From: Octopus sinensis
Lineage: Eukaryota
Assembly (NCBI RefSeq): GCF_006345805.1
Contig: NC_042998.1
Span: forward strand, 196,788,001-196,852,000
DNA length: 64,000 nucleotides
Direction of reading: 5' to 3'
The translations under genes were made by a program, and so were the position numbers. A model generated the notes under the pieces. The model was not told where the DNA came from and did no database searches. It worked only from the letters and a program-made list of their open reading frames with translations. Shown here one piece after another: positions 10,680 through 46,775 of the stretch (the stretch's first letter is position 1; the number at the start of each line of letters is the position of its first letter).

Positions 10680-11790
10680 GTCACAAGTCAGCCACATCAT
10701 AGTTCGCTATGTCGTGGCCAGTTGGGTCATAATCAATTGTGTCGAGGCCTGCAATGTCATAGTGAGTTACATTATAGCCAACTATGTCATAGTCAACTGT
10801 CTCATGGTCAGTTGTGTCATAGCTGTGGTTGTGGCCAGCTATGTCATAGTCAGTCGTGTCATAGTCAGTTGTATCGTGACCAAGTTATGTCATAGTCAGC
10901 TGTGTCATAGACAACTATGTTATAGTCAGTTGCCGGTTGTGTATCGGTCAGTGGTGTCGTAGTTAAATGTATCATATGTCAAAGTCAGTTGTGTCATAGT
11001 TGGCTTTGTTATGACCAGCTGTGTCGTGGTCAGCTGCATCAAGGTCAACTGTGTCATAGCCAATTATAATGGGTAGTTACGGTCATTTGAAAGATGTTCG
11101 ATTGTCACATTTTTCTCAATTATGTAATGACCAAAATATGTAATGGTAAGTAGTCAGGGGTCAACTGTGTCATGACATAATCAACAACATTGTGTTTAAC
11201 TGTGACGGTCATGGCAAACTGTAAAGCGGCGAGCTGGCAGAAACGTTAGCACGCCGGGCGAAATGCGTAGCCGTATTTCGTCTGCCGTTACGTTCTGAGT
11301 TCAAATTCCGCCGAGGTCGACTTTGCCTTTCATCCTTTCGGGGTCGATAAATTAAGTACCAATTACGCACTGGGGTCGATGTAGTCGACTTAATCCGTTT
11401 GTCTGTCCTTGTTTGTCCCCTCTGTGAGCCCCTTGTGGGAGTGAAGAAATAGGTATTTCGTCTGCCGCTATGTTCTGAGTTCAAATTCCGCCGAGGTCGA
11501 CTTTGCCTTTCATCCTTTCGGGGTCGATAAATTAAGTACCAGTTACGCACTGGGGTCGATGTAATCAACTTAATCCCTTTGTCTGTCCTTGTTTGTCCCC
11601 TCTGTGTTCAGCCCCTTGCGGGTAGTAAAGAAATAGGTCATGGCAAACTGTGATATGAAAACTGTGATATGACAAACTTTGGTCAAGTCAACCAAGTGTG
11701 TTGTGGCTAGCTATAATGGTCGACTACAGACTGGTCAGTTTTCTCATAGTCACCTGTGTTATAACCATAGGCTTTATAACACGGTCGGTC
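10680..11790. repeat. Degenerate ~15-bp tandem repeat (consensus about GTCATAGTCAGTTGT), split by a D dimer
   Basis: Recurrent GTCATAG/CAGTTGT/CAACTGT at ~15-bp spacing. Confidence 0.7.
11223..11635 (+). mobile_element. SINE D dimer (head + 2 units)
   Basis: One TSD GGTCATGGCAAACTGT at 11207-11222 and 11636-11651 flanks both units. Confidence 0.9.
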
Positions 11791-11921
11791 TTATCGGTTT
11801 GTTGACTGCAGGATGACATTGTCAATATCACATTGGATGTGTTATCACTATCATATTAGGTGTTTTCATATATCACCAATCTCACACTGTTATGTGGTTA
11901 TATCTATCAATCTCACATTGT

Positions 11922-12339
11922 TAAGGCGGCGAGCTGGCAGAAACGTTAGTGCGCCGGGCGAAATGCTTAGCGGTATTTCGTCTGTCGTTACGTTCTGAGT
12001 TCAAATTCTGCCGATGTCGACTTTGCCTTTCATCCTTTCTGGGTCGATAAATAAAGTACCAGTTTTGCACTGGGGTCGATGTAATCGGCTTAATCCCTTT
12101 GTCTGTCCTTGTTTGTCCCCTCTGTGTTTAGCCCCTTGTGGGTAATAAAGAAATAGGTATTTCGTCTGCCGCTACGTTCTGAGTTCAAATTCCGCCGAGG
12201 TCGACTTTGCCTTTCATCCTTTCGGGGTCGATAAATAAAGTACCAGTTTCGCACTGGGGTCGATGCAATCGTTTTAATCCCTTTGTCTGTCCTTGTTTGT
12301 CCGTTCTGTGTTTAGCCCCTTGTGGGTAGTAAAGAAATA
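11922..12339 (+). mobile_element. SINE D dimer
   Basis: TSD ATATCTATC(A/G)ATCTCACATTGT at 11900-11921 and 12341-12362. Confidence 0.9.
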
Positions 12340-12566
12340 TATATCTATCGATCTCACATTGTGAGGTGGTTAAAACCTATAGGTTTATTGTGTCTGATTG
12401 ATTATATTTTTCCTTTTCACGTTGGATGTGCCACGTGTTTATCAATATTACATTATCTGTCATTATAGCTATTAATAATCCATCGATGTAACTTGTGTGA
12501 GTGGTTTATATCTGTTCGATATCACATTGTCTAGGTTTGTGTCTATCAGTGTGTCATCTGTATTGA

Positions 12567-12790
12567 AGGCAGTGTGCTGGCAAAATCGTTAACACGCCGG
12601 GCAGAATGCTTAGCGGCATATCGTCTGTCTTTACGTTTTGGGTTCAAATTCCGCCGGGATCGACTTTGCCTTTCATCCTTTCGGGGGTGGGATGTCGATA
12701 AAATAAGTACCAGCTGAGCACTGGGTCGATGTAATTGACTTTCCCCGCTCCCTGTAAATTGCTGGCCTTGTGCCAAAGATTTGAAACTAA
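12567..12790 (+). mobile_element. Older SINE D' monomer
   Basis: Diverged head and core, D' tail CCTTGTGCCAAAGATTTGAAAC. Confidence 0.75.
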
Positions 12791-12944
12791 TATGTCACCT
12801 GTATCGATCATTTTAGTTTCCACTAAGGTCGCCGTTTCACTCCACACTCTGCAATGTTCAGGAATCTAGCAAGGACGCTATTCAAAGTAGATTTCTTAGC
12901 ATTTTCTCAATTCGGCAATATATTGTTATTTAGAACAAATATAC

Positions 12945-13358
12945 GGATCTTTTCGGTTTGACCGGCAGTTTTTTCTAGCGGCGTCATATGAAATTGTCAC
13001 CCATAATTATGACCCTAGTATCGATCTATTGCATTTCAATCTCTTTTAGGGTTAGGGTTAGGGGTGGGGGGAAGGGTATCTTTTTTTCTTCAGAAATGTA
13101 AATAAACCCAATCTGTTTCTTAAACGAGTGACATATTCATACGGCACAGTGTTTTCACCTCAATAGACGTCATTGATTGGTTGAAATTGCAGAAATTGAA
13201 GAAAAAAACAACAAATATCTTACAAACTATAGAATTTTCTCAATAAAGCCAAGAGAAAAAGATGTTTTATAAACACATTCTACCAGTATACGAAGTTTAA
13301 AAGTGTTTAGTTACGTGGAAATTATTTTTAAAAACTGCCGGTCAAACCGAAAAGATCC
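12945..13358. mobile_element. MITE with 29-bp perfect TIRs and 8-bp TSD (Merlin-like)
   Basis: TIR GGATCTTTTCGGTTTGACCGGCAGTTTTT; TSD AAATATAC at 12937-12944 and 13359-13366; GG termini with an 8-bp TSD fit Merlin, though hAT or P cannot be excluded. Confidence 0.8.
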
Positions 13359-13581
13359 AAATATACAACTCCAAAACAACAACAACAGTAACAACATCAA
13401 CAACAACGTACATTAAATTCTACGAAATAAACCAGAAATAAAGTCAAGAGAATTTAAGAGAGGACAACAAAGACAATCCTAAACAAATTCTTTTTTTTTT
13501 GTGTAGTAACCACAAACACCATTTAAATATTGTTGTTATTGTTGTAACGTTTTGTGAAGGGGATTATTTAGCTACTATTAT

Positions 13582-13595
13582 GTTGTTATAGCAAC
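13582..13595. promoter_or_regulatory. RFX X-box match
   Basis: GTTGTTATAGCAAC fits GTHNYYATRRNAAC; motif match only. Confidence 0.3.
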
Positions 13596-14364
13596 AGAAT
13601 AATTTCATGTACAAAAGAAGTAGTGACCTAGAATAAAAAGGGTTGAAATGAAAAGACTCGTTAAGTTGAAGATTTCAGCTGCATTGGACGTGAATATATA
13701 GTTTATCTTATAGCCTGCTGCCTTCCAGTAACCGCCAACTACCTGGCCGCCTGCTTTTCATGCGTAGCTGTGTTACATTGACACAGAGAGAACCCACCAC
13801 ATACCACCACCGCCACAACTATGTTTGACGTGTGGTGGCGTGTGGTAGCCTGTGGTGGCGTGTGGTGGCGTATGGTGTAGTTTTCTAGTCTACGTGTCGT
13901 TAAATCAAAAATCCACCCGTACAGGTATTGACTCTAACCCCTCAAATGCCGTCCTTTCATGATGTACTACCTGATAATTTTGGTGTGTTTCATCTTCCAC
14001 TCCTTCGTTCCAGTGTTTATCGCATTAAAATCTGACCAACATCGCTTCGAATTCCTTTATTCCTTACATTGGATACAGCACGCAGGATGTAGTAAACTTT
14101 GAACTTAGCAACTCATACCTATTTTACAACTGTATAATCATTGCCCCTTCATCGCTACCCCACTTTATATGTATGTATGTGTGTATGTATGTACGTCCGT
14201 ATCTATGTATTTATGTATGTATGTATGTATGTATGTATGTATGTATGTATGTTGTATGTATGTATGTATGTATGTATCTCTCTCTCACACATACACATGT
14301 TGAACCGTTTAATCTCTACACATTTTTTCTCTTTCCATTTTTTTTCATTCTCCATTTTTTTATC

Positions 14365-14573: not shown

Positions 14574-14760
14574 ATATTTCTTTACTACCCACAAGGGGCT
14601 AAACACAGAGGGGACAAGCAAGGACAGAAAAAGGATTATGTCGATTACATCTACCCCAGTGCGAAACTGGTACTTAATTTATCGATCTCGAAAGGATGAA
14701 AGGCAAAGTCGACCTCGGCGGAATTTGAACTCAGAATGCAACGACAGACGAGTTACCGCA
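14574..14760 (-). mobile_element. SINE D unit, 5'-truncated
   Basis: Reverse complement of the D unit. Confidence 0.8.
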
Positions 14761-15511
14761 AGAAACTTGTCTTTATATACAATATTTTCGTAAATAGAAA
14801 AAAATAAAAGGCGATCAGCTGATCTAGTTTCAATCCTATTTTGGGATTTCATCTGTAACAGACTACATTGTTTAATTGCCCACAGAAATAACACTGCTTG
14901 TAAACTCACTATTACTAACAACTTACGTAAATCGGATAATCCAATTTGCATACCATAGCGCATTCGTGACAGCTAATTCAATGTGTGTGTGTGTGTGTGA
15001 GAGACTATGTGTCATAGGTAAGTAAACCTATTGGATATGAGCAATACTTTTCAGTGTGTTTTATAGTCAATGTCTTTATATTTAGAATTCAATTATTGAA
15101 ATATTTCAGAGTTGAATTACTATTTTTTTTTTCCAGGAGAAAAGAATTTAACTTTTGTCAAAGTAAACAATGAGTGGACATAATGAAAGCTAGGTGTGGT
15201 TGGGAGCGGAGGATTAACGTGTCTGTGTGTTTATACCTGTTTAATATACTTCTTTATGAGCGTTATGCATGAACAGTCACGCACCAATATACATACGTAC
15301 ATACATTCATACATATGTATGTATGTATGCATATATATTATATGTATATATGCATACATATATTGCATGCTTTTTATTTATGTATGTAAATAAAAAAACA
15401 GTGCCATAATAAAGAACTCAATACTTGGTGTTCAGCTGAATATTTTCGTTTTAAAAGATAACAGTGTTCACGATGTTTCGCTAAATTTGGCTTTTTTTAA
15501 AAACTGACTGC

Positions 15512-15525: not shown

Positions 15526-16039
15526 GCATCGATTGTCCACTTGAACAACAATGACAACATACCATCATTTGATCGAATGTTTTTTTTTTCTTCCACTCTT
15601 TAATTTAAGAAATATTTTAGGAAGCCGAGAATCACCGCCATCTTCATAACATTGTCATTTGTAAACAGTCGGTAAATTTCTTCCCCAAACCATTCTTTAT
15701 ACTCCAGGCTCACAAACATACACTCGTACACAAACAAGTGCGGAAAGCATGCTTGGTCGGTTCAAACCACGAAAGCTGACATGTTCCTTCCATCGCCTTG
15801 AAACAATCTACTCCAGAGTTAAATCCTTATCTCACTAAGTCTCTCTCCATCGACCGCGTCCTCCGCTTCATTTTTTGTAAATCACTCATTCTCATTTAAT
15901 TGTATATATTTTGTTTGTTAATTCATACGTTTCGTCTCATTCGATACCCTAACCCCAATGTTTGTTTTGTCTGTCCTCGTATCGTCCCCTCTTTTTCTTA
16001 ACCTCGTGGTTAATAAAGAAATTCTCTCTCTCTCTCTCA

Positions 16040-16071
<32 letters not shown>

Positions 16072-16119: not shown

Positions 16120-17190
16120 CTGCTCCTGCCAATTACCTTCCTATCACATCTTTAAAATGATGAAGACAGCTATCAACAACAGCCTTCCCCGTCACTTTCT
16201 CTATTTCTCTCATCACCACCATCATGGTTTTCGGAAAGCCAGATCTGTCGTGTCACCCACCAGTGGGATCTGATTCTAAAGAAATTTGGTGAAAGCAATA
16301 TCGTTGGTCTCGACATCAGCAAGGCTTTCGTCTGTGTCTGGTTCGCTAATTACGTGGTAAAACTACTCATGTATGGTACCCAGCCTTCTTTCATCTCTTG
16401 ACTCGGTAGTTTTCTGTCAGATCGAACCGTATGCTGTATGTTGAAGGAACTTCCTCTAGCCATCAATTCTAGAATCCTCTCTAGCTTTCGGTTTATTCTC
16501 CACACCTTTCTCTGCATCAAATGTCTACTTATTGCCATCTACAACAACGCCTCCTTCCGTTAAGGATACCTATTTCTTTATTACCCACAAGGGGCTAAAC
16601 ATAGAGGGGACAAACAAAGACAGACATAGGTATTAAGTCGATTACATCGACCCCAGTGCGTAACTGGTACTTATCTAATCGACCCCGAAAGGATGAAAGG
16701 CAAAGTCGACCTCGGCGGAATTTGAACTCAGAACGCGGCGACGGACGAAATACCACAAAGCATTTCGCCCGGCGCGCTAACGTTTCTGCCAGTTCGCCGC
16801 CTTCCGTTAAGGATACCATCCTCGATTCCTTCTTAGTCTTCCGCACCCAAACGTTCAACTGAGATACCCAACACAAAATTTGTCATGACATCACGACAAA
16901 GGATTGCCATTCGTTCTTCCTGAACAACCCCGAACGTACATCTCCCATGAGCGATCTATGCACCACACCCCCAAAGCTGATTTCACAAACGATGAGATTG
17001 AGAGCAGTCTTTTATGCACCAATACCAATCTCATTATCTTTCAACAGCAAAAGACAAACGTCACTCAAGTGAAGAATATAAACCAGTGCGTTCGCTCGCC
17101 TACGCAGAGTGGCATTCAGCCAGAACCGACACGGTCGCACCAAATGCTCGCCCTTACGAATAGTGAGGATTTCATCGGACGAAAACCTCT
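16120..17190 (+). pseudogene. Decayed LINE reverse transcriptase (Jockey/CR1-like)
   Basis: HGFRKARS, VGLDISKAFVCVW (canonical LDISKAFDRVW), YGTQPSFIS*LGSFLSDRTV; has stops and frameshifts; split by a D SINE. Confidence 0.7.
16571..16801 (-). mobile_element. SINE D monomer
   Basis: TSD CCTTCCGTTAAGGATACC at 16553-16570 and 16800-16817. Confidence 0.92.
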
Positions 17191-18244: not shown

Positions 18245-18339
18245 TTAATTTATATTTACGAATTAGTAACTCTCTGTATTTAATTTTTTTTACGGTTCAT
18301 AGGATCATGTTCAAGGTGGCTTCGTCATTCATGTGTGCC

Positions 18340-18455
18340 AAATATTATCCAAACTCACAAAAGCGGGTATGCTTCCGTTCCGCTGCCAGTTGCAGAACAA
18401 CGCTGCCAAGACGTCTCCAAACAAGTCTGGCATACAATTGCAAAGCGAGACGCTG
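18340..18455 (-). pseudogene. Tx1/L1-like ORF2 fragment
   Basis: Minus frame CMPDLFGDVLAALFCNWQRNGSIPAFVS resembles the segment after the SPGxDG motif of L1/Tx1 ORF2 (from memory). Confidence 0.45.
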
Positions 18456-18517
18456 TGGTGGTGATCGTGGTGGTGGTGACGGTGGTGGTGGTGGTGGTGG
18501 TGACGGTGTTCGTGGCA

Positions 18518-19020
18518 GGCAGAACCATATCCCCAACAAAGATGTCCTCAGGCAAGCAGGAATACCAAGCATGTTTGCACTCCTCACGCAAAGACGTATG
18601 AGATGGCTTGGGCATGTTAGCCGTATGAAAGATGGCAGAATCCCGGGTAGACCGATCTTACGTTACAAGGATGTTTGCAAAAGGGACATGAAGGCCTGCA
18701 ACATCAATATTAGCGGTTGGGAGGCAGTTGCCGGCAACCGTGGAGATTGGCGACGTACCGTAAGAGAGGGAATACAAAGGAGTGACAGAGAGAGAGAGGA
18801 GAAATGGAAAGAAAAGAAGAGACGTCAACAAGAAACTATGGCACTACAACCAGCCAGGAACAGTCTTCGCTGCATTTGCGGTACCTGCCAGAGGGAGTGT
18901 TTGTCCAGGATAGGACTACACAGCCACAGCAGATGTATTAGGACGTGAAATGTAAAAGCCGGACTAGACTACTTTATGCGCAACTCCATTGTCTCCCGAG
19001 ACAAAAAGGATGCCAACAAT
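18518..19020 (+). mobile_element. 5'-truncated RTE-clade LINE
   Basis: NHIPNKDVLRQAGIPSM..QRRMRWLGHVSRM..GRPILRYKDVCKRDMK..CGTCQRECLSRIGLHSH; 3' hairpin TTGTCTC-CC-GAGACAA at 18989-19004. Confidence 0.9.
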
Positions 19021-20123: not shown

Positions 20124-20330
20124 GTTTAGTATTGTCTTTTTTATTTTTAACGCTTGTGCAAAATTGGATTTGTTTTTGGTGGTAGTGTTGGTGGTAGTGT
20201 TGGTGGTAGTGTTGGTGGTAGTGTTGGTGGTAGTGTTGGTGTCACGGTGTCACTTGTAGTGGTTGAGGTCGTAGTAGTGGTGTTGTTGTTGGCAGTTAGG
20301 GTAAACGGAGAAACGACGATGTCGTTGTTG

Positions 20331-20362
<32 letters not shown>

Positions 20363-20457
20363 GACGGTGGTGGTGGTGGTGGCGGCGGCGGCGGCGGTGT
20401 TGGTGACGGTGGTGGTGGTGGCGGCGGCGGCGGCGGTGGTGGTGTTGGTGGTGGTGG

Positions 20458-20924
20458 TGGAATTTCTCAATTCACTGGAGCCTCCTGGACTACCTCCACA
20501 CATATTAGCACTTAAAGTTGGAACTCCTGTAATGCTACTCCGCAATCTGGAACCACCAAGACTTTGCAATGGAACACGACTGGTGATAAAGAAAATGATG
20601 TCACACGTTATCGAGGCGATCATTCTTTCTGGATGTGGAAAAGCTGATGACGTCTTTATTCCAAGATTTCCTCTTACTCCATCAGGAGTAGAAATTCCAT
20701 TTACATTCAGAAGACTGCAATTCCCCCTTCGTGTCAGCTTTGCCATGTCCATTAACAAATCTCAGGGTCAAACCCTCTCTGTAGCTGGTCTTCTCTTGGA
20801 AGAGCCCTGCTTCTCGCATGGGCAACTGTATGTTGGCTGCTCAAGAGTAGGAACCAAAAGAAACCTTTTTGTATATGCTCCACAAGGAAAAACAAGGAAC
20901 ATTGTTTACAATGAGGTGTTATAA
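20458..20924 (+). CDS. Helitron RepHel C-terminal PIF1-type helicase fragment (uninterrupted, 5'-truncated)
   Basis: [84 protein letters not shown]. Confidence 0.93.
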
Positions 20925-23680: not shown

Positions 23681-23821
23681 ATCCATGTAAGTTACTGTCT
23701 TACCTGGTTGAACCTAGTTTCAGCTGCGTCTCAAACTTGATATCAAAAGCTCTTAACCGATTCGACATTGTACAAAGTGGTGATCTTCGATTATCATTGA
23801 CAACGTTAGAACTGAATATTC

Positions 23822-24250
23822 CTTTCTAGTCTAGGCACAAGGTCCAAACTTTTGGGGGAAGGGCCAGTCGATTAGATCAACCCCAGTACGCTACTGGTAC
23901 TTAATTTATCGATCCCGAAAGGAGGAAAGGCAAAGTCGACTTCGGCGGAATTCGAACTCAGAACGTAAAGACAGAGGAAATACCTATTTCTTTACTACCC
24001 ACAAGGGGGTAAATACAGAGAGGACAAACAAGGACAGACAAACGGATTAAGTCGATTATATCGACCTCAGTGCGTAACTGGTACTTATTTAATCGACCCC
24101 GAAAGGATGAAAGGCAAAGTCGACCTCGGCGGAATTCGAACTCAGAACGTAGCGGCAGACGAAATACCACTAAGCATTTCGCCCGGCATGCTAACGTTTC
24201 TTATTTCTTTATTGCCCACAAGGAGCTAAACATAGAGGGGACAAACTAGG
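23822..24250 (-). mobile_element. SINE D multimer (head-unit-D') with an extra partial unit joined into the head
   Basis: Junction GAAATAC|CTATTTC on the plus strand; second junction CGTTTCT|TATTTC near 24201. Confidence 0.8.
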
Positions 24251-24829
24251 ACAGTTGTGTACTGGAGTCGATCTAATCGATTGGACCCATCCCCCTAAAT
24301 TTTGGGCCTTGAGCTTAGAGTAGATAAGAATATAAAAGGATATTGCTGTAGATATCCCGGAAGTCCCGTAGAAGATCTTTGAACATATTTCCCTTGTTGA
24401 GGGAAATTTGGTTATCTCAGTGATGTCATCATGTATAACTCACTAGTGTAGTTGGAGTGGGGGAGCGGAAGGGGCGATCCGCCCCGGGTGGCATTTTTGA
24501 AGGGGGCGGCACTTTTAGGTCTGCTGCAGGCAGTATGTGTTTTTTGTGGGGTCCGTGGGTGGCAAACGGAAGGGCCGCCCCGGGTGGCATACACTACTTG
24601 GAAATCCTTTTATTCGATTGTGCTGTGGTTCTGAATTTTGAAGAAGGTAGGGAGTCCGTCGAGAGATTAGATTGTTGTAATGTGGTCGCTATATTAAGAG
24701 ACATATTTCGTTACTACATTGAGCCGTGGCCTCGATTTTACTAGGAGCACATGGAATGGCTTGCTGAAAAAAATACCCTAGGATAGTGGGTGGATAGGAT
24801 GAGTGAAAAGGTGAGGTGTAGTGTAGATG

Positions 24830-28118: not shown

Positions 28119-28516
28119 CTATTCAAAGCTGTTGGAGCTGTTTAAACATTTGTATTGTGTGCGTAAAATACACACAATATAGATAATAACGTATTAATTC
28201 ATATGGTACCAAATGGTAAATATTTATTTAATAACGAACCATGTAATCCACGTTCTCGAAAACGTATTTCTGTAAAATGTTGGTGGTGGGGTGGGGTCGT
28301 GGTGAAATTTCCCAAGGTTCCAGCCCACCCCACTCCCCGTTTTCCGGACCTCAAAAAGTGTTTTGTGGCATATTAGGAGGTCATCGTAATTCATTCAACG
28401 AAAAAAAAAGAAGAAATTCAAATGATTCTAGGATAGGGAGGGCGGGAGATACCCCCTTCTCTTTTTCCAGAACAAAAATAAGGGGTTTGCGGCATATTAA
28501 GAGGTACTTGATTCCA

Positions 28517-28800
28517 AAAGGCGGCGAGCTGGCAGAAACGTTAGCGCGCCGGGCGAAATGCTTAGCGGTATTTCGTCTGCCGCTATGTTCTGAGTTCAAA
28601 TTCCGCCGAGGTCGACTTTGCCCTTCATCCTTTCGGGGTCGACTAAATAATTCCGCCGAGGTCGACTTTGCCTTTCATCCTTTCGGGGTCGATTAAATAA
28701 GTACAAGTTACGCACTGGGGTCGATATAATCGACTTAATCTGTTTGTCTGTCCTTGTTTTCCCCCTCTGTGTTTAGCCCCTTGTGGGTAGTAAAGAAATA
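28517..28800 (+). mobile_element. SINE D with an internal partial duplication
   Basis: TSD GGTACTTGATTCCA at 28503-28516 and 28801-28814. Confidence 0.9.
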
Positions 28801-29181
28801 GGTACTTGATTCCACGCAAAAAACCAAGGTTTTATATTCTTAGTGAAACGCTTACGGGTGTACTTATCAAAATTTACCTAATCCAGTGTGGCCCTTCTTT
28901 TTTAGGACAGTAGAAGAGTGATCGGGAAAAGACTTTAGCTATTATTTCTAGCTGGTCGAGTGACCACATAAAGACTCTGTGGTTGTTGGTGTACTTGTTA
29001 TTGTGGTCGTCATTGGTAGTGTTAATAATGATAATGTTAGTGTTGCTTTGTTGTTGAAGGTGCTGTTGATGGTATATTATTACGAATAAGATAGTTTCTA
29101 TGTAACTTAAATATATATTACTGTTTCGAATGCATTTCATTTACTTTGGTAATTAATCCCTTATGGGAGGTAATGAATACC

Positions 29182-35645: not shown

Positions 35646-36424
35646 TTTTAGATAAAATATATGTGTATAAATGCGTGTGTATTCTGTGATGTGTGTGAGC
35701 TTGTGAAATATGGGTGTACCTGACATGTGTGTCACAGTATTTTCATTCAGTAATCCTTCTCTCTCTGACGACAGCAAATAACAAGGTTACAGTAGTATCA
35801 GTAGAAGGTGAGGTCAAGCTGAATAAATGTAACGTGTGTGTGTGCATGCGTGTGTGCGTGCGTGTGTGTGTGCATGCGTGTGTGCGTGCGTGTGTGTGTA
35901 CCTGCGTGCGTGTGTTTGTTTGTGTGTTGAGAGCAATGTATTTTAAATATAAAAATGAACTGTTCTGGACTTCGACATTTTAACCCAAGTATTATGTAAC
36001 GGATGTTTTTGGTTGCTATAGTGTACCGCAATAGGTCTTCGGTCGCTTTCGATAATGACAGGTGTTTTAGTTTATGCAAATGACGTCACAATAATGGTAT
36101 CAGACACCACAGAGGTCGAGGGAGTCAGTACCATTCTCATGAAATAAGCGCGGTGAAAGGAACAAAGATTCCGCCAGATAAATTAGTGGGTTTTCAACCC
36201 GACACTTGAAGAGTCATTTCCATGCTGCCAGAGAGCATCATCACCATCCGGCGCTCCATGATGCTGTGGCTGAATGGTCGAGCAGAGCCGCTGAACACAT
36301 ATATCACCTCTATAATATATTACTGTCTGGCTGTCGCTCCTGCCAAAATTTTCTTCCGATAAAATTGGAACGTCTGCTCGTTCACTTCTTGTTCAACTGG
36401 TCAGGTAGTCCTCAAAACGATATT

Positions 36425-36925
36425 AATCCTTTCTACTGTAGGAACAAGGTCTGACATTTTGGGTGAGGGACTAGTCGATTACATCGTCCCCCAATGCTCA
36501 GCTAGTGCTTATTTTATCGACCTCCCAGTACCAAGCTGGTACTTATTTTATTGACTTCGGGCGGCGAGCTGGCAGAATCGTTAGCACGCCGGGCGCAATG
36601 CTTAGCGGTATTTCTGCCGTTACGTTCTGAGTTCAAATTCCGCCGAGGTCGACTTTGCCTTTCATCCTTTCGGGGTCGATAAATTAAGTACCAGTTACGC
36701 ACTGGGGTCGATGTAATCGACTTAATTCGTTTGTCTGTCCTTGTTTGTCCTCTCTGTGTTTAGCCTCTTGTGGGTAGTAAAGAAATAGGTACTTATTTTA
36801 TTGACTTCGACAGAACGAAAGCAAAGTCTACACCGGCGGCATTTGAACTCAAAACATAAAGTCGGAAGAAAAGCAGCTAAGCATTTTGTCCGGCACGGTA
36901 ACGATTCTGTCAGCTCGCCGTCTTA
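36425..36925 (-). mobile_element. Old SINE D' interrupted by a younger D copy in the opposite orientation
   Basis: D' halves at 36425-36559 and 36788-36925. Confidence 0.7.
36560..36787 (+). mobile_element. SINE D monomer
   Basis: TSD GGTACTTATTTTATTGACTTCG at 36538-36559 and 36788-36809. Confidence 0.92.
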
Positions 36926-40444: not shown

Positions 40445-40631
40445 CAGAGTAAAGTGTAAAGTGGCTTGCTGATTGATGCAAAGTCATTTTTTTCTTCTTT
40501 TTCTCAAAATTTTCATTAACTAATCGAAGGGGTATCTGCATTCATGACAGGCCCGGGTCGACTAGCCAGATCAGCACGATTGGTGTTAAGTTTCAACATC
40601 TATAGGTTGGTGTCCACAAGAAACAAAAGTA

Positions 40632-40698
40632 TGGCGGCGAGCTGCCAGAATCGTTAGCACAGCGGGCGAAATGCTTAGCAGTATTTCGTCTGTCGCTA
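40632..40698 (+). mobile_element. SINE D head running directly into the 20-bp array
   Basis: GGCGGCGAGCTGCCAGAATCGTTAGC..GTATTTCGTCTGTCGCTA. Confidence 0.85.
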
Positions 40699-41294
40699 TA
40701 AAGAAATGGGAAAGGCAATAAAGAAATAGGAAAGGCAATAAAGAAATAGGAAAGGCAATAAAGAAATAGGAAAGGCAATAAAGAAATGGGAAAGGCAATA
40801 AAGAAATAGGAAAGGCAATAAAGAAATAGGAAAGGCAATAAAGAAATAGGAAAGGCAATAAAGAAATGGGAAAGGCAATAAAGAAATAGGAAAGGCAATA
40901 AAGAAATGGGAAAGGCAATAAAGAAATAGGAAAGGCAATAAAGAAATGGGAAAGGCAATAAAGAAATGGGAAAGGCAATAAAGAAATGGGAAAGGCAATA
41001 AAGAAATAGGAAAGGCAATAAAGAAATAGGAAAGGCAATAAAGAAATGGGAAAGGCAATAAAGAAATAGGAAAGGCAATAAAGAAATAGGAAAGCAATAA
41101 AAGAAATAGGAAAGGCAATAAAGAAATGGGAAAGGCAATAAGAAATAGGAAAGCAATAAAAGAAATAGGAAAGGCAATAAAGAAATGGGAAAGGCAATAA
41201 AGAAATAGGAAAGGCAATAAAGAAATAGGAAAGGCAATAAAGAAATAGGAAAGGCAATAAAGAAATGGGAAAGGCAATAAAGAAATGGGAAAGG
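40699..41294. repeat. 20-bp minisatellite, 30 units of AAAGAAAT(A/G)GGAAAGGCAAT
   Basis: Direct count; two or three units carry 1-bp indels. Confidence 0.97.
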
Positions 41295-41729: not shown

Positions 41730-41987
41730 CAGCTTTAAGTTTGCATTATGGTTGGGTAGTTCACTGTATTGTATCCCTGATCATGATATACTAAATGTTC
41801 AGTCAACATAGCTCTAAGCATCACAGTCGTTATATAGTTTCATAATTGAAAGTAGCAGTAACACTGTAAAATTGACGAGTGTTTTGGTAGCCGTATTGTG
41901 TAATTTGATCTGAGTTGAAGTGGTTTTGAGGCTTTTATGAGAAAATCTCGTCTTTGCGATGTAATTATAGTTATGTTACATAACTAT

Positions 41988-42588
41988 AAGGCGGCGAGCT
42001 GGCAGAAACGTTAGCGCGCCGGACGAAATACTTAGCGGTATTTCGTCTGTCGTTACGTTCTGAGTTCAATTTCCGCCGGGGTCGACTTTGCCTTTCATCC
42101 TCTCGGGGTCGATAAATAAAGTACCAGTTACGCACTGGGGTCGATGTAATCGACTTAATACCTATGTCTGTCATTGTTTGTCCCCTCTGTGTGTAGCCCC
42201 TTGTGGGTAATAAAGAAATAGGTATTTCGTCTGCCGTTACGTTCTGAGTTCAAATTCCACTGAGGTCGACTTTGCCTTTCGTCCTTTCGGGGTCGATAAA
42301 TAAAGTACCAGTTACGCACTGGAGTCGATGTAATCGACTTTATCCGTTTGTCTGTCCTTGTTTGTCCCCTCTGTGTTTAGTCCCTTGTGGGTAGTAAAGA
42401 AATAGGTATTTCGTCTGCCGTTACGTTCTGAGTTCAAATTCCGCCGAGGTCGACTTTGCCTTTCATCCTTTCGGGGTCGATAAATTAAGTACCAGTTACG
42501 CACTGGGGTCGATGTAATCGACTTAATCCGTTTGTCTGTCCTTGTTTGTCCCCTCTATGTTTAGCCCCTTGTGGGCAATAAAGAAATA
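41988..42588 (+). mobile_element. SINE D trimer
   Basis: Head + 3 units; TSD ATAGTTAT(G/A)TTACATA at 41967-41982 and 42590-42605. Confidence 0.9.
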
Positions 42589-43484
42589 CATAGTTATATT
42601 ACATATGTGGGATCGCTAAAGAAAGTTTATCAGGCACTGCAAGGGATAGCATTTGTAACGACTTGGATACTTCTCTCTTCATGTTGTCCTAGGCAGGATA
42701 CGAACTTGTGTCTTTGATACGAATCGCAAGCGTGTCTTCTTTTGGTCTGCAGCAAAATACAAAGATAAATTAATTGTCTTATCTTCATTAACAATGCTCT
42801 TAAGATCTCTGTTTACAGAGATAGGGTACATTCCTAGAGATACACTTCACTTCTAAATTCTGCAAGACAGACACCACCTACGGTTATTCTCTGTCAAGTT
42901 TCACAGTAAATTCATGTTTCCTTGTATTTCGTGTCTTCCGTACTTTGTGGTCATCTTCATCTTCGCCGCTGCTAATATCTGTTTGTTCGTCATCAACCCT
43001 GCGATTGAACGGCCTGCTAAAAATAGCAGTCAGATTTTCCTCCTCGATTCACACTATTTGCTGTTCTAAAAGTGGAACGGCAGCACTTTCTACAATGTAG
43101 TCGTAGTATACAAAAAGACGGGATGGTCGCATCTTCTCTCCCTCCCACACCCTTGTCTGTCTGTCTGTCTGTCTGCCTGTCTGTCTCTGTCTCTCTGTCT
43201 CTCTGTCTCTCTGTCTCCCTTCTTCCCCTCCCCTTCCATGCAAGCGCGACGTTTGGTATTACTCAAGCATCGGTTTCCACTTGGACGAACGACGCGACGA
43301 AGTACGACCAAATAATTTGGGTGTCTTAATTGCTGTTCTTATTGTTGTGGTTATCATTGCTGTTATGGCAATATCCAGTTTCTCCTTCAACTACGACAGG
43401 CTTTTACACAAACAGCCTTATACGTAGACACAAACACAAGCGCGCGCACACACACTTGCATGCATAAACATATCTCATTGTATC

Positions 43485-43533
<49 letters not shown>

Positions 43534-43537
<4 letters not shown>

Positions 43538-43725: not shown

Positions 43726-43730
43726 GACTG

Positions 43731-43771
<41 letters not shown>

Positions 43772-43901
43772 CTATATAAATTCATATATACATACAAATA
43801 TACATATATGCATATAAGATATACATGTGCATCTATATTCACGCGCATACACACACACACATCTCTGTGCATGTATACACATATATAATATATATGAATA
43901 T

Positions 43902-43933
<32 letters not shown>

Positions 43934-44297
43934 GTGGGTGAATGAGTGTATTATGATGACTGACAAATAATCAGACAGAATTAGTTTAGAGAGAGAGATA
44001 GCTTGTTTGACACTGGAGAACATTTTGTATTGCAATTAAGGATTTTTGGGGATTGTGAGAGTGGTTTGCATCAAATAATTAACAGTTGTTTCTGCTGTTG
44101 TTCCAGATAGAAAGTTCAGACCTTTCATCGTGAAGTTAAATAATGTAAATTATTCAGTTATTGAAAATATTGCTGTAACAGTATTTTGAAACATAGGACA
44201 ATTCTTTTTATGTAGTAATAGTAATTTTGGCAATACTTCGCCGGCTACAAAGCAAAGTTTAATGACGAAGGATAAAGAAAATGAAATATTAACAGGT

Positions 44298-44705
44298 TAA
44301 GGCGGCGAGCAGGCAGAAACGTTAGCAGGCAGAAAAGGGCGCAATACTTTTGCAGTATTTCGTCTGCCGTTACGTTGTGAGTTCAAATTCCGCCGAGGTC
44401 GACTTTGCCTTTCACCCTTTCGGGGTCGATAAATTAAGTACCAGTTACGCACTGGGGTCGATGAATTCGACTTAATCCGTTTGTCTGTCCTTGTTTGTCC
44501 TCTCTGTGTTTAGCCCCTTGTGGGTAGTAAAGAAATAGGTATTTCGTCTGCCACTACGTTCTGAGTTCAAATTCCGCCGAGGTCGACTTTGCCTTTCATC
44601 CTTCGGAGTCGATAAATTAAGTACCAGTTGCGTACTGCGGTTGATCTAATTGACTGCCTCCCTCCATCCAAATTTCGGACCTTGTGTCTAAAGTAGAAAA
44701 GATTA
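44298..44705 (+). mobile_element. SINE D head-unit-D' composite
   Basis: Junction AAGAAATA|GGTATTTC; D' tail CCTTGTGTCTAAAGTAGAAAAG. Confidence 0.85.
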
Positions 44706-45039
44706 TGTTGTGAGTTTAAATTCCGCCGAGCTCGACTTGACCTTTCATCTTTTCGGGGTCAATAAAATAAGTACCAGTTGAACATTAGGGTCGAAGCAAT
44801 CGATTAACCACCCCACCCGAATTTCTGACTATGTGCCAAAATTTGAAAGCAATATTAAAAGGATGGTCGTTAAGGGTATTGACTACTTTTGCCACCAAAT
44901 AGTATATATTTCCTTATATGCAATTGTTCCTTTCTGTGCGCGCGCGCAATTTTGCCCTTACATTGTGTATAGTGTGTTTGTAGGAATTTACAAGTCTTCA
45001 TTGACATCAAACACTTCCAATAGATCAAAACAGACTTCG

Positions 45040-45382
45040 AATCTTTTCTCCTTGACCGGCAGATTTTTAAAATAATTTCTTTGTAACTAAACACTTTTAA
45101 ACTTCGTATACTGGTAGAATGTGTTACATAAAACATCTTTTTCTCTTGGCGTTCTTGAGAAAATTCTGTAGTTTGTAAGCTATTTGTTGTTAAATTTCTC
45201 GTATTTCGGCAATTTCAACCAATCAATGATGTCACATAGCTTACAAACTACAGAATTTTCTCAAGAACGCCAAGAGAAAAAGATGTTTTATGTGACACAT
45301 TCTACCAGTATACGAAGTTTAAAAGTGTTTAGTTACAAAGAAATTATTTTTTAAATCTGCCGGTTAAAGTGAAAAAAATCTC
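45040..45382. mobile_element. Foldback derivative of the Merlin-like MITE
   Basis: ~140-bp inverted arms, as at 31348-31709. Confidence 0.8.
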
Positions 45383-45438
45383 AGACTTCCACCTTTTTCT
45401 CCTTCAAATCGGGTGTTAGCTACCGAGGTACCCACATA

Positions 45439-45755
45439 GAAGGCGCGTAGTTTAATGACTAGGGGATTGGGGTCACGATCGTAAGGTCGTGAGTTCGATT
45501 CCCGGCAGCGCCTTGTGTCCGTGAGCAAGACACTTTATTTCTCGTTGCTCCAGTCCACTCGGCTAGCAAAAATTGAATAGTACCCGTAATTCAAAGAGCC
45601 AGCGTTGTCACATTCTGTGTTATGCTGATCCTCCCTGTGAACTACTTTAAGGGTATGCGTGTCTTTGGAGTACTCAACCACTTGCACGTTAATTTTACGA
45701 GCAAGTTCTTCCATTGGTCGAATCAACTGGAACACTCATCGTCGTAACCGCCGGA
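45439..45755 (+). mobile_element. Diverged SINE with C head and B1 tail
   Basis: Same layout as 21417-21734. Confidence 0.75.
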
Positions 45756-45833
45756 AAACCTGGTACCCACTTTGCACATTCTCCGATACTCAATGTCTTC
45801 CACCACCACCACCTGGAATACATTGTCATCATA

Positions 45834-46250
45834 TATTTCTTTACTGCCCACAAGGGGCTAAACACAGAGGAGACAAACAAGGACAGACAAACGGATTAAG
45901 TTGATTATATCGACCCCAGTGCGTAACTGGTACTTAATTTATCGACCCCGAAAGGATGAAAGGCAAAGTCGACCTCAGCGGAATTTGAACTCAGAACGTA
46001 ACGGCAGACGAAATACCTATTTTTTTACTACCCACATGGGGCTAAACACAGAGAGGACAAACAAGGACAGACAAACGGATTAAGTCGATTACATCGACCC
46101 CAGTGCGTAACTGGTACTTATTTAATCGATCCCGAAAGGATGAAAGGCAAAGTCGACCTCGGCAGAATTTGAACTCAGAACGTAGCGGCAGACGAAATAC
46201 CGCTAAGCATTTCGCCCAGCGTGCTAACGATTCTGCCAGCTCGCCACCTT
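45834..46250 (-). mobile_element. SINE D dimer
   Basis: TSD ATACATTGTCAT(C/T)ATA at 45818-45833 and 46251-46266. Confidence 0.9.
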
Positions 46251-46775
46251 ATACATTGTCATTATAGCCGAATTCTACAGCAAGCTCACAGATTGTGACA
46301 CGTTTGTTCATGCGAATCAGTTCGGCCATCCTTTCGGGGTCGATTTATGTCAGTGGTCGTAGCTGATGGCCTACCATTGCGTAGTCTGTTTTCAATGCTG
46401 TTTTTTTCTTCTTCCTTATATTTCATTCCTCTATGCATGTTTCCCTCGTCTCTTGTCATCTCCTTAGACAACCTGTAACCTTCTGTGGATGTCGGAGAAG
46501 CTACACCTCCCCATCAAGGACTTAATGATGGCTCATTGCATCCCGCTTGGAACCCATTGTTTGCCTGCAATAAAGAAAAGCAGAAGAGTTACTAGAGAGG
46601 ATGTTGTACTCTCCCAACGACCAATGTCAGTTCAACTCTCGTACGCACACACATATACACATGTCTGCCTGCCTGCCTGTCTGTCTGTCTGTCAGTCTGT
46701 CTGTATGTATGTATGTGTGTATGTGTGTATGTGTGTGTGTTTGTGTATGTGTGTGTATGTATGTATGTATGTATG

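What the first reader, a model, noticed from the sequence alone, without database searches (positions are those of the whole stretch)
11207..46266. Self-targeting SINE concatemers: family D grows head-to-tail at its own internal GGTA site and the multimers transpose as single units
Seen: D occurs as monomer, dimer (11223, 11922, 45834) and trimer (41988). Every tandem junction of this type is AAGAAATA|GGTATTTC, so added units start ~50 bp inside the element. Each of these four multimers is bounded by one 16-22 bp TSD, so it inserted in a single event. Four TSDs begin with GGT(A/C) right after the 3' end (11636 GGTCA, 16570 minus strand GGTAT, 28801 GGTAC, 36788 GGTAC), and the motif is also in the upstream TSD copy, so it is target-derived. 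That is 4 of about 11 scorable insertions against roughly 1% expected for GGT in AT-rich DNA (my rough estimate); most of the rest start with TA. Known: in target-primed reverse transcription the TSD start is the sequence that pairs with the RNA 3' end. Inference: RNAs from multimers end in ...GAAATA-GGTA(UUU), prime best on GGTA targets including the element's own internal site, and homologous pairing of the cDNA then yields a seamless extra unit. This would be a positive-feedback loop that builds SINE arrays. I do not know of a description of it.
Basis: partly seen in the sequence, partly recalled or inferred. Interest (0 to 1): 0.8.

Follow-up and report, generated by a model that had tools for sequence, protein, structure and literature searches.

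The report
Compound octopus SINEs, fixed internal joint
A 234-bp mobile element of an octopus-type genome is repeatedly found as two or three units fused at exactly the same internal base, most likely stitched together while being copied through RNA. The pattern is real and resembles SINE arrays already described in clams, but this 64-kb window cannot settle how it forms.

Summary
Family D is a 234-bp SINE: hairpin head with a box-B-like motif, conserved core, and a tail ending GTAAAGAAATA.

- **Multimers.** There are three dimers and one trimer.
Three loci carry D fused to a sister family (X1 or X2').
- **Junctions.** Eight of ten SINE-SINE junctions read AAGAAATA|GGTATTTC. Position 51 is the first paired base after the head-hairpin loop. 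The other two junctions lie at positions 18 and 67.
- **TSDs.** Outer TSDs are 15-23 bp with 0-1 mismatch.
- **GGT enrichment.** Four of nine scorable D TSDs start with GGT, against a 1.24% background (p about 3e-6).

Units within one multimer belong to different D subfamilies that also occur as monomers. This excludes both in-situ duplication and clonal descent from one ancestral dimer.

A D RNA running past its tail into GGUA(UUU) is a good common explanation for the GGT targets and the fixed joint. One locus favours each. A single outer TSD does not show that multimers transpose as units.

The closest published architecture is the TSD1-(SINE)n-TSD1 arrays of bivalve SINEs. I call this a new variant of a known kind, of moderate interest.

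The parts
7200..7605 (+). Heterodimer. It consists of a diverged head (7200-7246), a D unit (7247-7430), and an X1 unit starting at position 51 (7431-7605). Junction AAGAAATA|GGTATTTC at 7430/7431. Weak outer TSD of about 13-16 bp with 2-3 mismatches.
11207..11650 (+). D dimer 11222-11635 (junction 11451/11452) with perfect 15-bp TSD GGTCATGGCAAACTG at 11207-11221 and 11636-11650.
11899..12362 (+). D dimer 11922-12339 (junction 12155/12156) with 23-bp TSD TATATCTATCRATCTCACATTGT (1 mismatch). Its two units share three rare variants.
12566..12793 (+). X1 monomer. It is a sister SINE family with the same head and core but a different tail (...TTGAAACTAATAT). Used as the reference for X-type bases.
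14575..14763 (-). 5'-truncated D copy starting at about position 45-49, with no detectable TSD. It is the only copy that ends near the junction site, and it does not start at 51.
16557..16817 (-). D monomer 16571-16803 with perfect TSD GGTATCCTTAACGG. Sister of the first unit of the trimer.
23816..24254 (-). Three-part compound: D 182-234 (24202-24254), then D 18-234 (23985-24201), then X2' 51-tail (23816-23984). The junctions are tail|18 and tail|51. No TSD found.
28503..28814 (+). D monomer 28518-28800 with an internal 50-bp tandem duplication (28599-28700). Perfect TSD GGTACTTGATTCCA.
36420..36925 (-). X2 SINE that hosts the D monomer 36560-36787(+). D sits at the antisense core site GGTACTTATTTTATTGACTTCG with a perfect 22-bp TSD (36538-36559 and 36788-36809).
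40630..41294 (+). D head (positions 1-69) followed directly by 30 copies of a 20-bp unit built from the D tail (ATAAAGAAATAGGAAAGGCA).
41967..42605 (+). D trimer 41987-42588 (junctions 42220/42221 and 42404/42405) with 16-bp TSD ATAGTTATRTTACATA. The three units fall in three different groups of the unit tree.
44285..44862 (+). Three-family compound: D 1-234 (44298-44537), X2' 51-tail (44538-44702), X1 67-tail (44703-44857). It appears to be flanked by one weakly scored 12-nt repeat AATATTAA[C/A]AGG, whose first 7 nt overlap the X1 tail.
45819..46266 (-). D dimer 45834-46251 (junction 46018/46017, tail variant AAAAAATA) with 15-bp TSD TATRATGACAATGTA. Its two units belong to two different subfamilies.
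50482..50686 (-). D monomer with an internal deletion, in TA-rich DNA. The TSD is ambiguous.
51201..51398 (+). D copy 5'-truncated at about position 29-31. The 3' flank starts TATATAC.
54811..55068 (-). D monomer 54823-55055 with 13-bp TSD AGATATTTGATTG. Sister of the last unit of the trimer.

Best explanation
Family D is a 234-bp SINE of the octopus CORE-SINE type. It has a 5' head that folds into a long hairpin and carries a pol III box-B-like motif, a conserved core shared with sister families X1, X2 and X2', and a family-specific tail ending GTAAAGAAATA.

Its multimers are compound retrocopies. A complete D, from head to the last base of the tail, is joined to nucleotide 51 of another unit. 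That unit can be D, X1 or X2'. G51 is the first paired base after the UAGC tetraloop of the head hairpin, and it opens the octamer GGTATTTC.

I think these joins are made repeatedly during reverse transcription, as follows:
1. Some D transcripts run a few bases past the tail into GGUA(UUU). They would come from existing multimers or from copies that sit in front of a GGTA.
2. A DNA 3' end reading ...GAAATACC pairs with that short extension and is extended through the whole D RNA.
3. In the variant I slightly prefer, this DNA end is the cDNA growing on another SINE RNA in the same integration event. That is a microhomology-guided template switch, and it yields a chimera bounded by one TSD.

The same 3'-extended RNAs would explain why ordinary D insertions so often land on GGT(A) targets. 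Multimers, once made, supply more such RNAs.

Shown: the anatomy, the junction constancy, the TSDs, the GGT enrichment, and the mixed-subfamily make-up of multimers.
Inferred: the 3'-extended RNA, the pairing step, and which DNA end primes.
For: 1. Precise joint. There are 8 matches to AAGAAATAGGTATTTC against 0.08 expected, with three kinds of downstream unit. D is the upstream partner in 8 of 8.
2. Hairpin position. G51 is the first base after the tetraloop of a 13-bp hairpin (-16 kcal/mol, z = -3.2). The tail end GAAATA is the reverse complement of 53-58 TATTTC, so a tail followed by GGUAUUUC forms a small hairpin.
3. GGT targets. Four of nine D TSDs start with GGT (background 1.24%, p = 3e-6). 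Three of the four are GGTA (p = 0.04). Two match the junction 16-mer with only 2 mismatches.
4. Not in-situ duplication and not one clonal dimer. Adjacent units differ by 5.0-8.7%, against 8.2% for all pairs, and at sites shared with other loci. The units of the trimer and of dimer 45834 sit in different supported groups together with monomers. All four allele combinations occur across the joint.
5. X-type bases (T64, T66, T67) begin 13-16 nt after the joint in two heterodimers. The exchange therefore happened at the joint, not somewhere in the 120-bp shared core.
6. No free RNA end at 51. No solitary copy starts at 51 among 13 loci.
7. Evidence favouring the RNA-level variant:
   - Compound 44298 (D + X2' + X1) appears to be flanked by one weakly scored 12-nt repeat, and compound 24254 has junctions at 67 and 18. 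Both have the same 'exact 3' end onto truncated unit' architecture.
   - The head of 44298 shares C40 (GCGCAAT) with monomer 36560, which belongs to the subfamily of its own first unit.
   - Inner units do not have fewer private changes than last units.
8. Precedents:
   - Template jumping and RNA-level joining make U6/L1-type chimeras (PMC6789731).
   - TSD starts correlate with 3'-terminal RNA repeats in RTE-mobilised SINEs (PMC6007223).
   - TATTT acts as a pol III terminator in mammalian SINEs (PMC8466645).
Against: - There is no RNA evidence. The 3'-extended transcript is inferred only from TSD starts.
- D contains seven T3 runs and no T4. If TATTT stops pol III at the joint, it should also stop it at position 53-57 of the first unit.
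- Locus 7200 fits the DNA-level rival better. It has an X-like, strongly diverged head (8/36 non-CpG mismatches, 5 of 7 CpG lost) next to a clean D body (6/160, 11/12 CpG kept). Positions 51-66 of its unit 1 equal those of unit 2, with a combination (C61, C64, T66) unique to this locus. My model needs two switches there.
- A cDNA has no obvious reason to leave its template exactly at 51.
- Everything rests on about 14 loci in one 64-kb window. The subfamily groups have only moderate support (87-92% ultrafast bootstrap, no starred branch).
- The link between subfamily and what follows the tail is only a trend (32/500 shuffles; permutation p = 0.12).
Confidence: 0.4

Rival explanations
1. D RNAs ending in ...GAAAUA-GGUA(UUU) prime on the nicked bottom strand of a resident SINE copy at its own GGTA (position 50/51). 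The cDNA then pairs with the homologous upstream part of the resident copy, so a seamless extra unit is added in situ. The head and the last unit belong to the old resident copy.
For: - It shares all the evidence for the 3'-extended RNA: GGT TSDs, the fixed joint, D always upstream, and no solitary copy starting at 51.
- Locus 7200 has exactly the predicted structure: X-like old head plus 51-66, then D 67-234, then X1 51-end. The region 51-66 is duplicated with 1 mismatch and a unique allele combination.
- Monomer 36560 shows that ordinary TPRT does hit a GGTACTT site inside a resident SINE, with a 22-bp TSD.
- GGTATTTC occurs 16 times in the window, and every occurrence is in a SINE. An RNA ending in GGUAUUU would therefore find its best matches there.
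Against: - Positions 51-70 of adjacent units differ at 15/160 sites, against 3/132 in outer TSDs (p = 0.014). This includes 4 differences at 24201 and 3 each at 11222 and 44298. Heteroduplex repair could blur this test.
- Inner units, which should be younger, carry more private changes than last units: 19 in 5 against 8 in 4 (p = 0.09 against equality).
- The head of 44298 carries a marker of the subfamily of its first unit.
- The junctions at positions 18 and 67 and the three-family compound need another mechanism.
Confidence: 0.25
2. One or a few founder multimers. A dimer arose once and multimers are transcribed and retrotransposed as units. Unit number and unit make-up then change through homologous template switching between RNAs or through ectopic recombination or gene conversion. 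No new junction is ever formed. GGT-class monomers come from initiation at the internal tail of a multimer RNA.
For: - A constant joint is what inheritance gives for free.
- Half of the D-bearing loci here are multimers, so multimer RNAs should be common.
- The three GGT-class monomers are the closest relatives of first units of multimers (16570 with 41987_u1; 28518 with 24201_u1 and 45834_u1; 36560 in the same unresolved group as 44298_u1 and 7200_u1), while monomer 54822 groups with a last unit.
- The two units of dimer 11922 share three rare variants.
Against: - Units do not cluster by position in the multimer: 6, 6 and 4 label changes, no better than shuffles.
- Four gametes occur across a 28-nt span around the joint.
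- In heterodimers 7200 and 24201, X-type bases start 13-16 nt after the joint. Crossovers would have to fall in the least homologous 10% of the shared region twice out of three.
- No two multimers in the window are copies of each other.
Confidence: 0.2
3. A free RNA end at G51. SINE RNAs are cut in the apical loop of the head hairpin (between C50 and G51). The 3' fragment is then either copied to its end, after which the reverse transcriptase jumps end-to-end onto the 3' end of a D RNA, or it is first ligated to a D RNA by an RtcB-type ligase and the chimeric RNA is retrotransposed.
For: - The joint sits exactly at the loop/stem boundary of a stable hairpin conserved in D, X1 and X2'.
- It has the same architecture as U6/L1 chimeras, for which RNA ligation by RtcB before retrotransposition was demonstrated (PMC6789731).
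- It explains the heterologous downstream partners and the off-site junctions at 18 and 67 as ordinary jumps.
Against: - If RNAs starting at G51 were common templates, solitary insertions starting at 51 should be common. There are none in 13 loci; the nearest starts at 45-49.
- It does not explain the GGT-start TSDs, or why D is always the upstream partner.
Confidence: 0.08
4. In-situ tandem duplication. Replication slippage or unequal crossing-over inside a single inserted monomer, for example between the GGTA at 51-54 and a GGTA that follows the tail, duplicates the 184-bp unit after insertion.
For: - A single outer TSD is expected.
- Dimer 11222 is followed by GGT, so it has the required short direct repeat.
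- Smaller internal duplications do occur: 50 bp in 28518, and a tail-derived 20-bp array at 40698-41294.
- Recombination has been discussed as a source of bivalve SINE arrays (PMC11481361).
Against: - Units of 45834 and 41987 differ at subfamily-diagnostic sites shared with other loci: 10 of 13 differences in 45834. They group with units elsewhere.
- Heterodimers cannot arise by duplication.
- Three of the four D-D multimers are not followed by GGT.
Confidence: 0.04

Closest known systems
TSD1-(SINE)n-TSD1 tandem-like arrays of tRNA-related conserved-domain SINEs in bivalves (Scapharca broughtonii; PMC11481361)
   Same: The host is a mollusc and the SINE type is the same (tRNA-like head plus conserved domain). 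The first unit has a complete head, later units all have the same head truncation, the last unit has a complete tail, and one TSD bounds the whole array. Some arrays also include units of other families.
   Different: - In the clam, inner units also have truncated tails and arrays reach 4-15 units. Here the tail is complete to its last base at every position-51 joint and arrays are 2-3 units.
- The paper gives no mechanism for this type beyond a general reference to recombination.
- It reports no target motif and no subfamily analysis.
Chimeric retrocopies of the U6/L1 type (template switching by LINE reverse transcriptase, or RtcB ligation of RNAs before retrotransposition; PMC6789731)
   Same: The 5' partner is present up to its exact natural 3' end and is fused to a 5'-truncated 3' partner. 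There is no TSD or tail between them, and one TSD surrounds the chimera.
   Different: In U6/L1 chimeras the truncation point of the 3' partner varies. Here 8 of 10 joints are at one base. Both partners are SINEs, and the product can serve as a source again.
Head-to-tail SINE multimers in mammals (B2, Dip, Ves; PMC8466645)
   Same: A large share of copies sits in head-to-tail di- to octamers, including mixed-family ones. The authors leave open whether they arise by insertion into a neighbour or by retrotransposition of dimeric templates.
   Different: There the units are full-length and are joined through the A-rich tail of the upstream unit. Here the downstream units lack the first 50 bases and the joint is seamless.
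Composite/dimeric SINE families amplified as units (Alu; MD-SINEs of bivalves)
   Same: They have a fixed internal joint, one promoter-bearing first unit, and a single TSD (own knowledge; MD-SINEs are mentioned).
   Different: Such families are clonal, and each half has its own diagnostic bases in all copies. Here first and later units are interleaved with monomers in the tree.
Insertion signature of RTE-related SINEs: TSD start correlates with 3'-terminal repeats of the RNA (PMC6007223)
   Same: The idea is that the first bases of the TSD reflect pairing between the nicked target and the 3' end of the template RNA. This is the logic used here for the GGT and TA classes.
   Different: There the pairing sequence is a microsatellite-like repeat that is part of the element. 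Here it would be sequence beyond the tail: the next unit or the flank.
Octopus CORE-SINEs OR1/OR2 (Ohshima and Okada 1994, cited in PMC4824008 and PMC4758252)
   Same: Octopus SINEs with a pol III head and the CORE central domain. D's core GCCTTTCATCCTTTCGGGGTCGATAAATTAAGTACC resembles the MIR/CORE motif as I recall it.
   Different: I could not obtain the OR1/OR2 sequences, so identity with D is not tested. I found no report of multimers for them in the papers I could read.

Membership tests
SINE (non-autonomous, LINE-mobilised retroposon) | Short, non-coding, dispersed copies bounded by target-site duplications of variable sequence | tested here: met
   The element is 234 bp at 14 loci. Eight TSDs of 13-23 bp have 3 mismatches in 132 nt, and all have different sequences.
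SINE (non-autonomous, LINE-mobilised retroposon) | Internal pol III promoter (boxes A and B) in a head derived from tRNA, 7SL or 5S RNA | tested here: inconclusive
   GAGTTCAAATTCC resembles box B, and TGGCAGAAACG is a weak box A (read from the sequence). ARAGORN finds no tRNA in the window. Rfam finds no tRNA match even at E<=10; the only hit is a chance miRNA-like hairpin. The head folds as one long hairpin.
SINE (non-autonomous, LINE-mobilised retroposon) | 3' tail shared with a partner LINE | not testable with these tools
   No LINE 3' end with this tail lies in the window. One other repeat (15966-16022) shares the last 57 bp at 81% identity. No octopus genome was reachable.
CORE-SINE superfamily | Conserved ~65-bp CORE domain after the head | not tested
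   The resemblance to the MIR/CORE motif is from memory only. The literature says octopus OR1/OR2 are CORE-SINEs. No reference sequence was available to align.
Template-switch / RNA-ligation chimeric retrocopy | Upstream partner complete to its natural 3' end, with no TSD or spacer at the joint | tested here: met
   Nine of 10 joints carry the full tail...AAGAAATA in eight and AAAAAATA in one. The X2' tail at 44702 lacks about 4 nt.
Template-switch / RNA-ligation chimeric retrocopy | One TSD around the whole chimera | tested here: met
   Four D-D multimers have 15-23 bp TSDs with 0-1 mismatch. 44298 has a weakly scored 12-nt repeat with 1 mismatch, and 7200 has a weak TSD. None was found for 24254.
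Template-switch / RNA-ligation chimeric retrocopy | Truncation point of the downstream partner varies from copy to copy | tested here: not met
   Eight of 10 joints are at position 51. The others are at 18 and 67.
Clonal dimeric SINE family (Alu-like) | Each half has its own diagnostic bases shared by all copies | tested here: not met
   First units, later units and monomers are interleaved. Label changes are 6, 4 and 6, no better than shuffles. Four gametes occur across the joint.
In-situ tandem duplication / satellite-like array | Units of one array are each other's closest relatives | tested here: not met
   Within-multimer distance is 5.0-8.7%, against 8.2% overall. Units of 41987 and 45834 group with units at other loci. 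Only 11922 shows locus-specific sharing.
   GGT occurs in 4 of 9 TSDs (p = 3e-6), and 3 of the 4 are GGTA. Two flanks match the 16-mer joint with 2 mismatches.
   Locus 7200 shows it: 1 mismatch in 20 with unique shared alleles. Overall there are 15/160 mismatches against 3/132 in outer TSDs (p = 0.014). For D-D joints alone the figures are 7/100 against 3/69 (p = 0.53). Heteroduplex repair could erase the signal.
   Locus 7200 fits: the head is far more diverged than the D body. Locus 44298 does not: its head shares C40 with the subfamily of its first unit. Private changes number 19 in 5 inner units against 8 in 4 last units.

The most novel reading that the evidence does not exclude
This is a self-reinforcing loop in which what lies just beyond a SINE's tail becomes heritable targeting information. 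Transcripts of D that read into GGUA(UUU) select GGTA-like priming sites, including position 51 of resident D, X1 and X2' copies or of nascent cDNAs. Each success creates a new tail-GGTATTTC joint that emits more such transcripts. SINE arrays, and a target preference, would then spread without any change in the LINE enzyme.
Probability: 0.3. Interest if true: 0.7.

Novelty: new variant of a known kind. Interest (0 to 1): 0.45.

Why it matters
How dimeric and tandem SINEs arise is usually left open; the B2/Dip/Ves and bivalve papers say so themselves. If the joint at G51 and the GGT-start TSDs have one cause, a template RNA that extends past its tail, three things would follow:
- Target choice in target-primed reverse transcription could be set by the source locus rather than by the endonuclease.
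- That choice could be inherited by daughter copies.
- It could drive arrays of SINEs, which are raw material for satellites and for new composite families.

SINEs make up about a tenth of octopus genomes (11.6% in O. vulgaris; PMC13282606). This makes the question directly testable with existing assemblies and long-read RNA data.

If instead the multimers trace to a few founders, this is an ordinary composite SINE family.

Tried and rejected
More copies from elsewhere:
- Exact-pattern scans for the joint and for the core gave one chance bacterial hit (L001) and nothing else. I scanned metagenome, viral and genome collections.
- A protein search with an ORF that crosses the joint found one D-like monomer on a 543-bp metagenome contig (L002).
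- A Helitron ORF of the window hits O. bimaculoides proteins at 87% identity, but no octopus contigs are on record. Two long ENA contigs (L003, L004) hold no D.

Ribozyme, circular-RNA or tRNA-processing explanation: Rfam finds no ribozyme or tRNA, neither at gathering scores over the whole window nor at E<=10 on a D dimer.

Insertion of a truncated D next to the tail of a resident D: rejected, because the resident copy's TSD would then lie between the units. It never does.

Age tests by CpG retention: CpGs are almost all intact in every D unit, so there is no resolution. The apparent CpG loss in heads is confounded by a subfamily marker (GCACGCC versus GCGCGCC).

Partner LINE: no LINE 3' end with the D tail lies in the window. 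Pfam on the transposon ORFs gave only a Pif1 2B domain and a weak zinc finger.

Covariation test of the head hairpin: the variation among copies is mostly single-sided decay, so I did not pursue it.

Ohshima and Okada 1994 (OR1/OR2 sequences) is not held in the library.

Full report
**What the window is**

The 64-kb window is AT-rich eukaryotic DNA full of microsatellites and transposon debris. A Helitron helicase ORF at 20154-20924 is 87% identical to a predicted Octopus bimaculoides protein. Rfam and ARAGORN find no RNA genes.
- a 5' head that folds into one long hairpin and carries a box-B-like GAGTTCAAATTCC;
- a central block shared with other repeat families of the window;
- a tail ending GTAAAGAAATA.

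Octopus SINEs OR1/OR2 are listed in the literature as CORE-SINEs. D looks like that kind of element. I could not get their sequences to test identity.

**Inventory**

blastn and nhmmer give the following D loci:
- Dimers at 11222-11635, 11922-12339 and 45834-46251(-).
- A trimer at 41987-42588.
- Monomers at 16571-16803(-), 28518-28800, 36560-36787, 50482-50686(-) and 54823-55055(-).
- 5'-truncated copies at 14575-14763(-) and 51201-51398.
- A head fragment at 40630-40698.

- D+X1 at 7200-7605.
- D+X2' at 23816-24201(-). This is preceded by a further D tail fragment at 24202-24254.
- D+X2'+X1 at 44298-44857.

**The joint**

AAGAAATAGGTATTTC occurs 7 times exactly and once with one mismatch, against 0.08 expected. 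These are the five D-D joints and the three D-X joints. In all eight, the complete D tail abuts nucleotide 51 of the next unit.

Two other joints exist. One is D tail | position 18 of D at 24202/24201. The other is X2' tail | position 67 of X1 at 44702/44703, with 2-4 nt of microhomology and a slightly shortened tail.

Folding shows that G51 is the first paired base 3' of the UAGC tetraloop of a 13-bp hairpin (-16 kcal/mol, z = -3.2). The last six bases of the tail, GAAATA, are the reverse complement of bases 53-58, TATTTC, so the joint itself forms a small hairpin.

**TSDs and target motif**

The four D-D multimers are bounded by TSDs of 15, 23, 16 and 15 bp with 0, 1, 1 and 1 mismatches. Four monomers have perfect TSDs of 13-22 bp.

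Four TSDs begin with GGT, and both copies carry it, so it comes from the target: GGTCATGG, GGTATCCT, GGTACTTG, GGTACTTA.

- GGT makes up 1.24% of trinucleotides.
- Four of nine scorable TSDs gives p = 3e-6, or 2e-4 after correcting for 64 trinucleotides.
- Three of the four are GGTA (p = 0.04). Two flanks match the 16-mer joint with only two mismatches.
- Five of the other seven flanks start with TA (p = 8e-5).
- The motif was picked after looking at the data, and n is small.

One GGT target (36560) is the antisense core of a resident X2 SINE.

**Is it one ancestral duplication, or duplication in place?**

Neither fits.
- Adjacent units differ by 5.0-8.7% (mean 6.5%), against 8.2% for all pairs of D units. 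Their outer TSDs are almost intact.
- Most differences lie at sites where each allele is shared with copies at other loci, for example 10 of 13 differences in dimer 45834.
- In a maximum-likelihood tree the only supported groups mix loci:
  - 16570 with the first unit of the trimer (87/78);
  - 54822 with the last unit of the trimer (92/77);
  - 28518 with the first units of 24201 and 45834 (92/90).
- Position in the multimer is not clustered: 6, 4 and 6 changes, as in shuffles.
- Across the joint, all four combinations of a tail variant (11 nt upstream) and a unit variant (17 nt downstream) occur.
- In heterodimers 7200 and 24201, X-type bases begin 13-16 nt after the joint. Any exchange was at the joint, not spread over the 120-bp shared core.

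Multimers were therefore assembled repeatedly from different sources. Only dimer 11922 shows locus-specific sharing, with three rare variants in both units.

**What the single TSD does and does not show**

That does not follow. No two multimers in the window share unit-specific mutations, so transposition as a unit is not shown here.

**A common cause for the joint and the GGT targets**

Such RNAs would come from multimers or from copies lying in front of a GGTA. A DNA 3' end ...GAAATACC can pair with that extension and be extended through the D RNA. Partial matches elsewhere in the genome give the GGT-class TSDs.

Known facts fit this:
- TSD starts track the 3'-terminal sequence of the template in RTE-type SINEs.
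- TATTT is a pol III terminator in mammalian SINEs.

Two points from the window:
- D has no T4 run but seven T3 runs, so termination at any one of them must be partial. This counts against a clean stop at the joint.
- X1 also shows microhomology use. The 12-nt repeat flanking 44298 overlaps the X1 tail by 7 nt.

As a hint only, the three supported clades of D units are each uniform for what follows the tail, GGT or not (tree label test 32/500; permutation p = 0.12).

**Which DNA end primes?**

Here the window gives out.

Bases 51-66 of its first unit equal those of the X1 unit, with an allele combination found nowhere else. This is what a D inserted into an old X1 copy with a hidden TSD of about 16 nt would look like. 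Monomer 36560 proves that resident SINEs are hit at GGTA-like sites.

*In favour of a template switch by the growing cDNA within one integration event.*
- Compounds 44298 (three families, apparently flanked by one weakly scored repeat) and 24254 have joints at 67 and 18 with the same architecture.
- The head of 44298 shares a rare base (C40) with monomer 36560, of the same subfamily as its own first unit.
- Bases 51-70 of adjacent units differ at 15/160 sites, against 3/132 in outer TSDs (p = 0.014).
- Inner units have more private changes than last units, not fewer: 19 in 5 against 8 in 4.

None of these is decisive. Heteroduplex repair can erase a hidden TSD, and private changes include source-gene variation.

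**Rivals with little support**

- *A free RNA 5' end at G51*, from cleavage in the loop followed by an end-to-end jump or RtcB-type ligation as for U6/L1 chimeras. This predicts solitary copies starting at 51. There are none in 13 loci; the nearest starts at 45-49. It also leaves the GGT targets unexplained.
- *In-situ duplication.* This is contradicted by the subfamily make-up and by the heterodimers.
- *Insertion of a truncated D beside a resident tail.* This would leave the resident TSD between the units, which is never seen.

**Comparison with what is known**

- **Mammals.** Head-to-tail SINE multimers are common, with 40-49% of B2 and Dip copies in them. Their origin is left open. Those units are full-length and are joined through A-tails.
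- **Bivalves.** The closest published architecture is in Scapharca broughtonii: TSD1-(SINE)n-TSD1 arrays in which the first SINE has a complete head, later units share one head truncation, and the last has a complete tail. In contrast to the window, inner tails are truncated there, arrays are longer, and no mechanism, target motif or subfamily analysis is given.
- **U6/L1-type chimeras.** The octopus case shares the "exact 3' end onto truncated partner, one TSD" design but differs in having a fixed truncation point.

I therefore call this a new variant of a known kind.

**Limits**

All statistics come from about 14 loci in one window. The two most direct tests are typing the heads of D-X heterodimers genome-wide and comparing orthologous loci between octopus genomes (empty versus multimer, or monomer versus dimer with the same TSD).

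Noticed in passing
window 40630-41294: A D head (positions 1-69) runs straight into 30 copies of a 20-bp unit (ATAAAGAAATAGGAAAGGCA). The unit is made of the last 15 nt of the D tail plus GGAAA. In this minisatellite the tail is again followed by GG.
   Followed up: partly
window 28599-28700: A 50-bp tandem duplication (96% identical copies) lies inside D monomer 28518, with boundaries at an AAAT microhomology.
   Followed up: no
window 36420-36925: An X2 SINE is split by D monomer 36560-36787, which inserted at the antisense core site GGTACTTATTTTATTGACTTCG with a perfect 22-bp TSD. The X2 copy also carries a ~35-bp internal duplication of its core.
   Followed up: partly
window 24252-24331: A 5'-truncated X2' copy on the + strand lies head-to-head against compound 23816-24254(-), separated by 4 nt. 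It could be a separate insertion or part of one complex event.
   Followed up: no
window 15760-16022: An unrelated repeat with a box-B-like GGTTCAAACC ends in 57 bp that are 81% identical to the D tail, followed by (TC)n. It may be another SINE family, or a LINE 3' end, that shares the tail and so points to the partner LINE.
   Followed up: partly
window 23985-24168 and 23816-23984: Both units of heterodimer 24201 carry G in GAGTTCGAATTCC, seen in no other unit of the window, although their first 20 nt differ at 4 sites. This may be local gene conversion between adjacent units.
   Followed up: no
window 11207-11650, 16557-16817, 28503-28814, 36538-36809: All four GGT-start TSDs are perfect (0 mismatches in 65 nt). 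The TSDs of the other three multimers each have one mismatch (3 in 54 nt). The GGT class may be younger, but n is too small.
   Followed up: no
window 44298-44353: The head of compound 44298 has a 12-nt direct duplication (AGCAGGCAGAAA twice) that replaces the GCGCGCC stretch, next to an almost consensus D body.
   Followed up: no
window 20154-20924; 5479-5823; 18307-18948; 62753-63136; 52470-53222: Transposon ORF fragments. One is a Helitron Pif1 2B-domain helicase, 87% identical to O. bimaculoides XP_014774982.1. Three look like LINE C-terminal pieces. One is a gag-like ORF with a CCHC motif.
   Followed up: partly
window 2156-4083 and 57770-58483: Very long microsatellites: (TGTA)n of 1.9 kb and (TA)n of 0.7 kb.
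   Followed up: no
L002 1-543: A D-like monomer lies on a 543-bp contig of an ENA metagenome assembly (ERZ23499442). A junction-spanning ORF of the window matched its product at 88% identity over the aligned part. This suggests octopus DNA in that sample.
   Followed up: no
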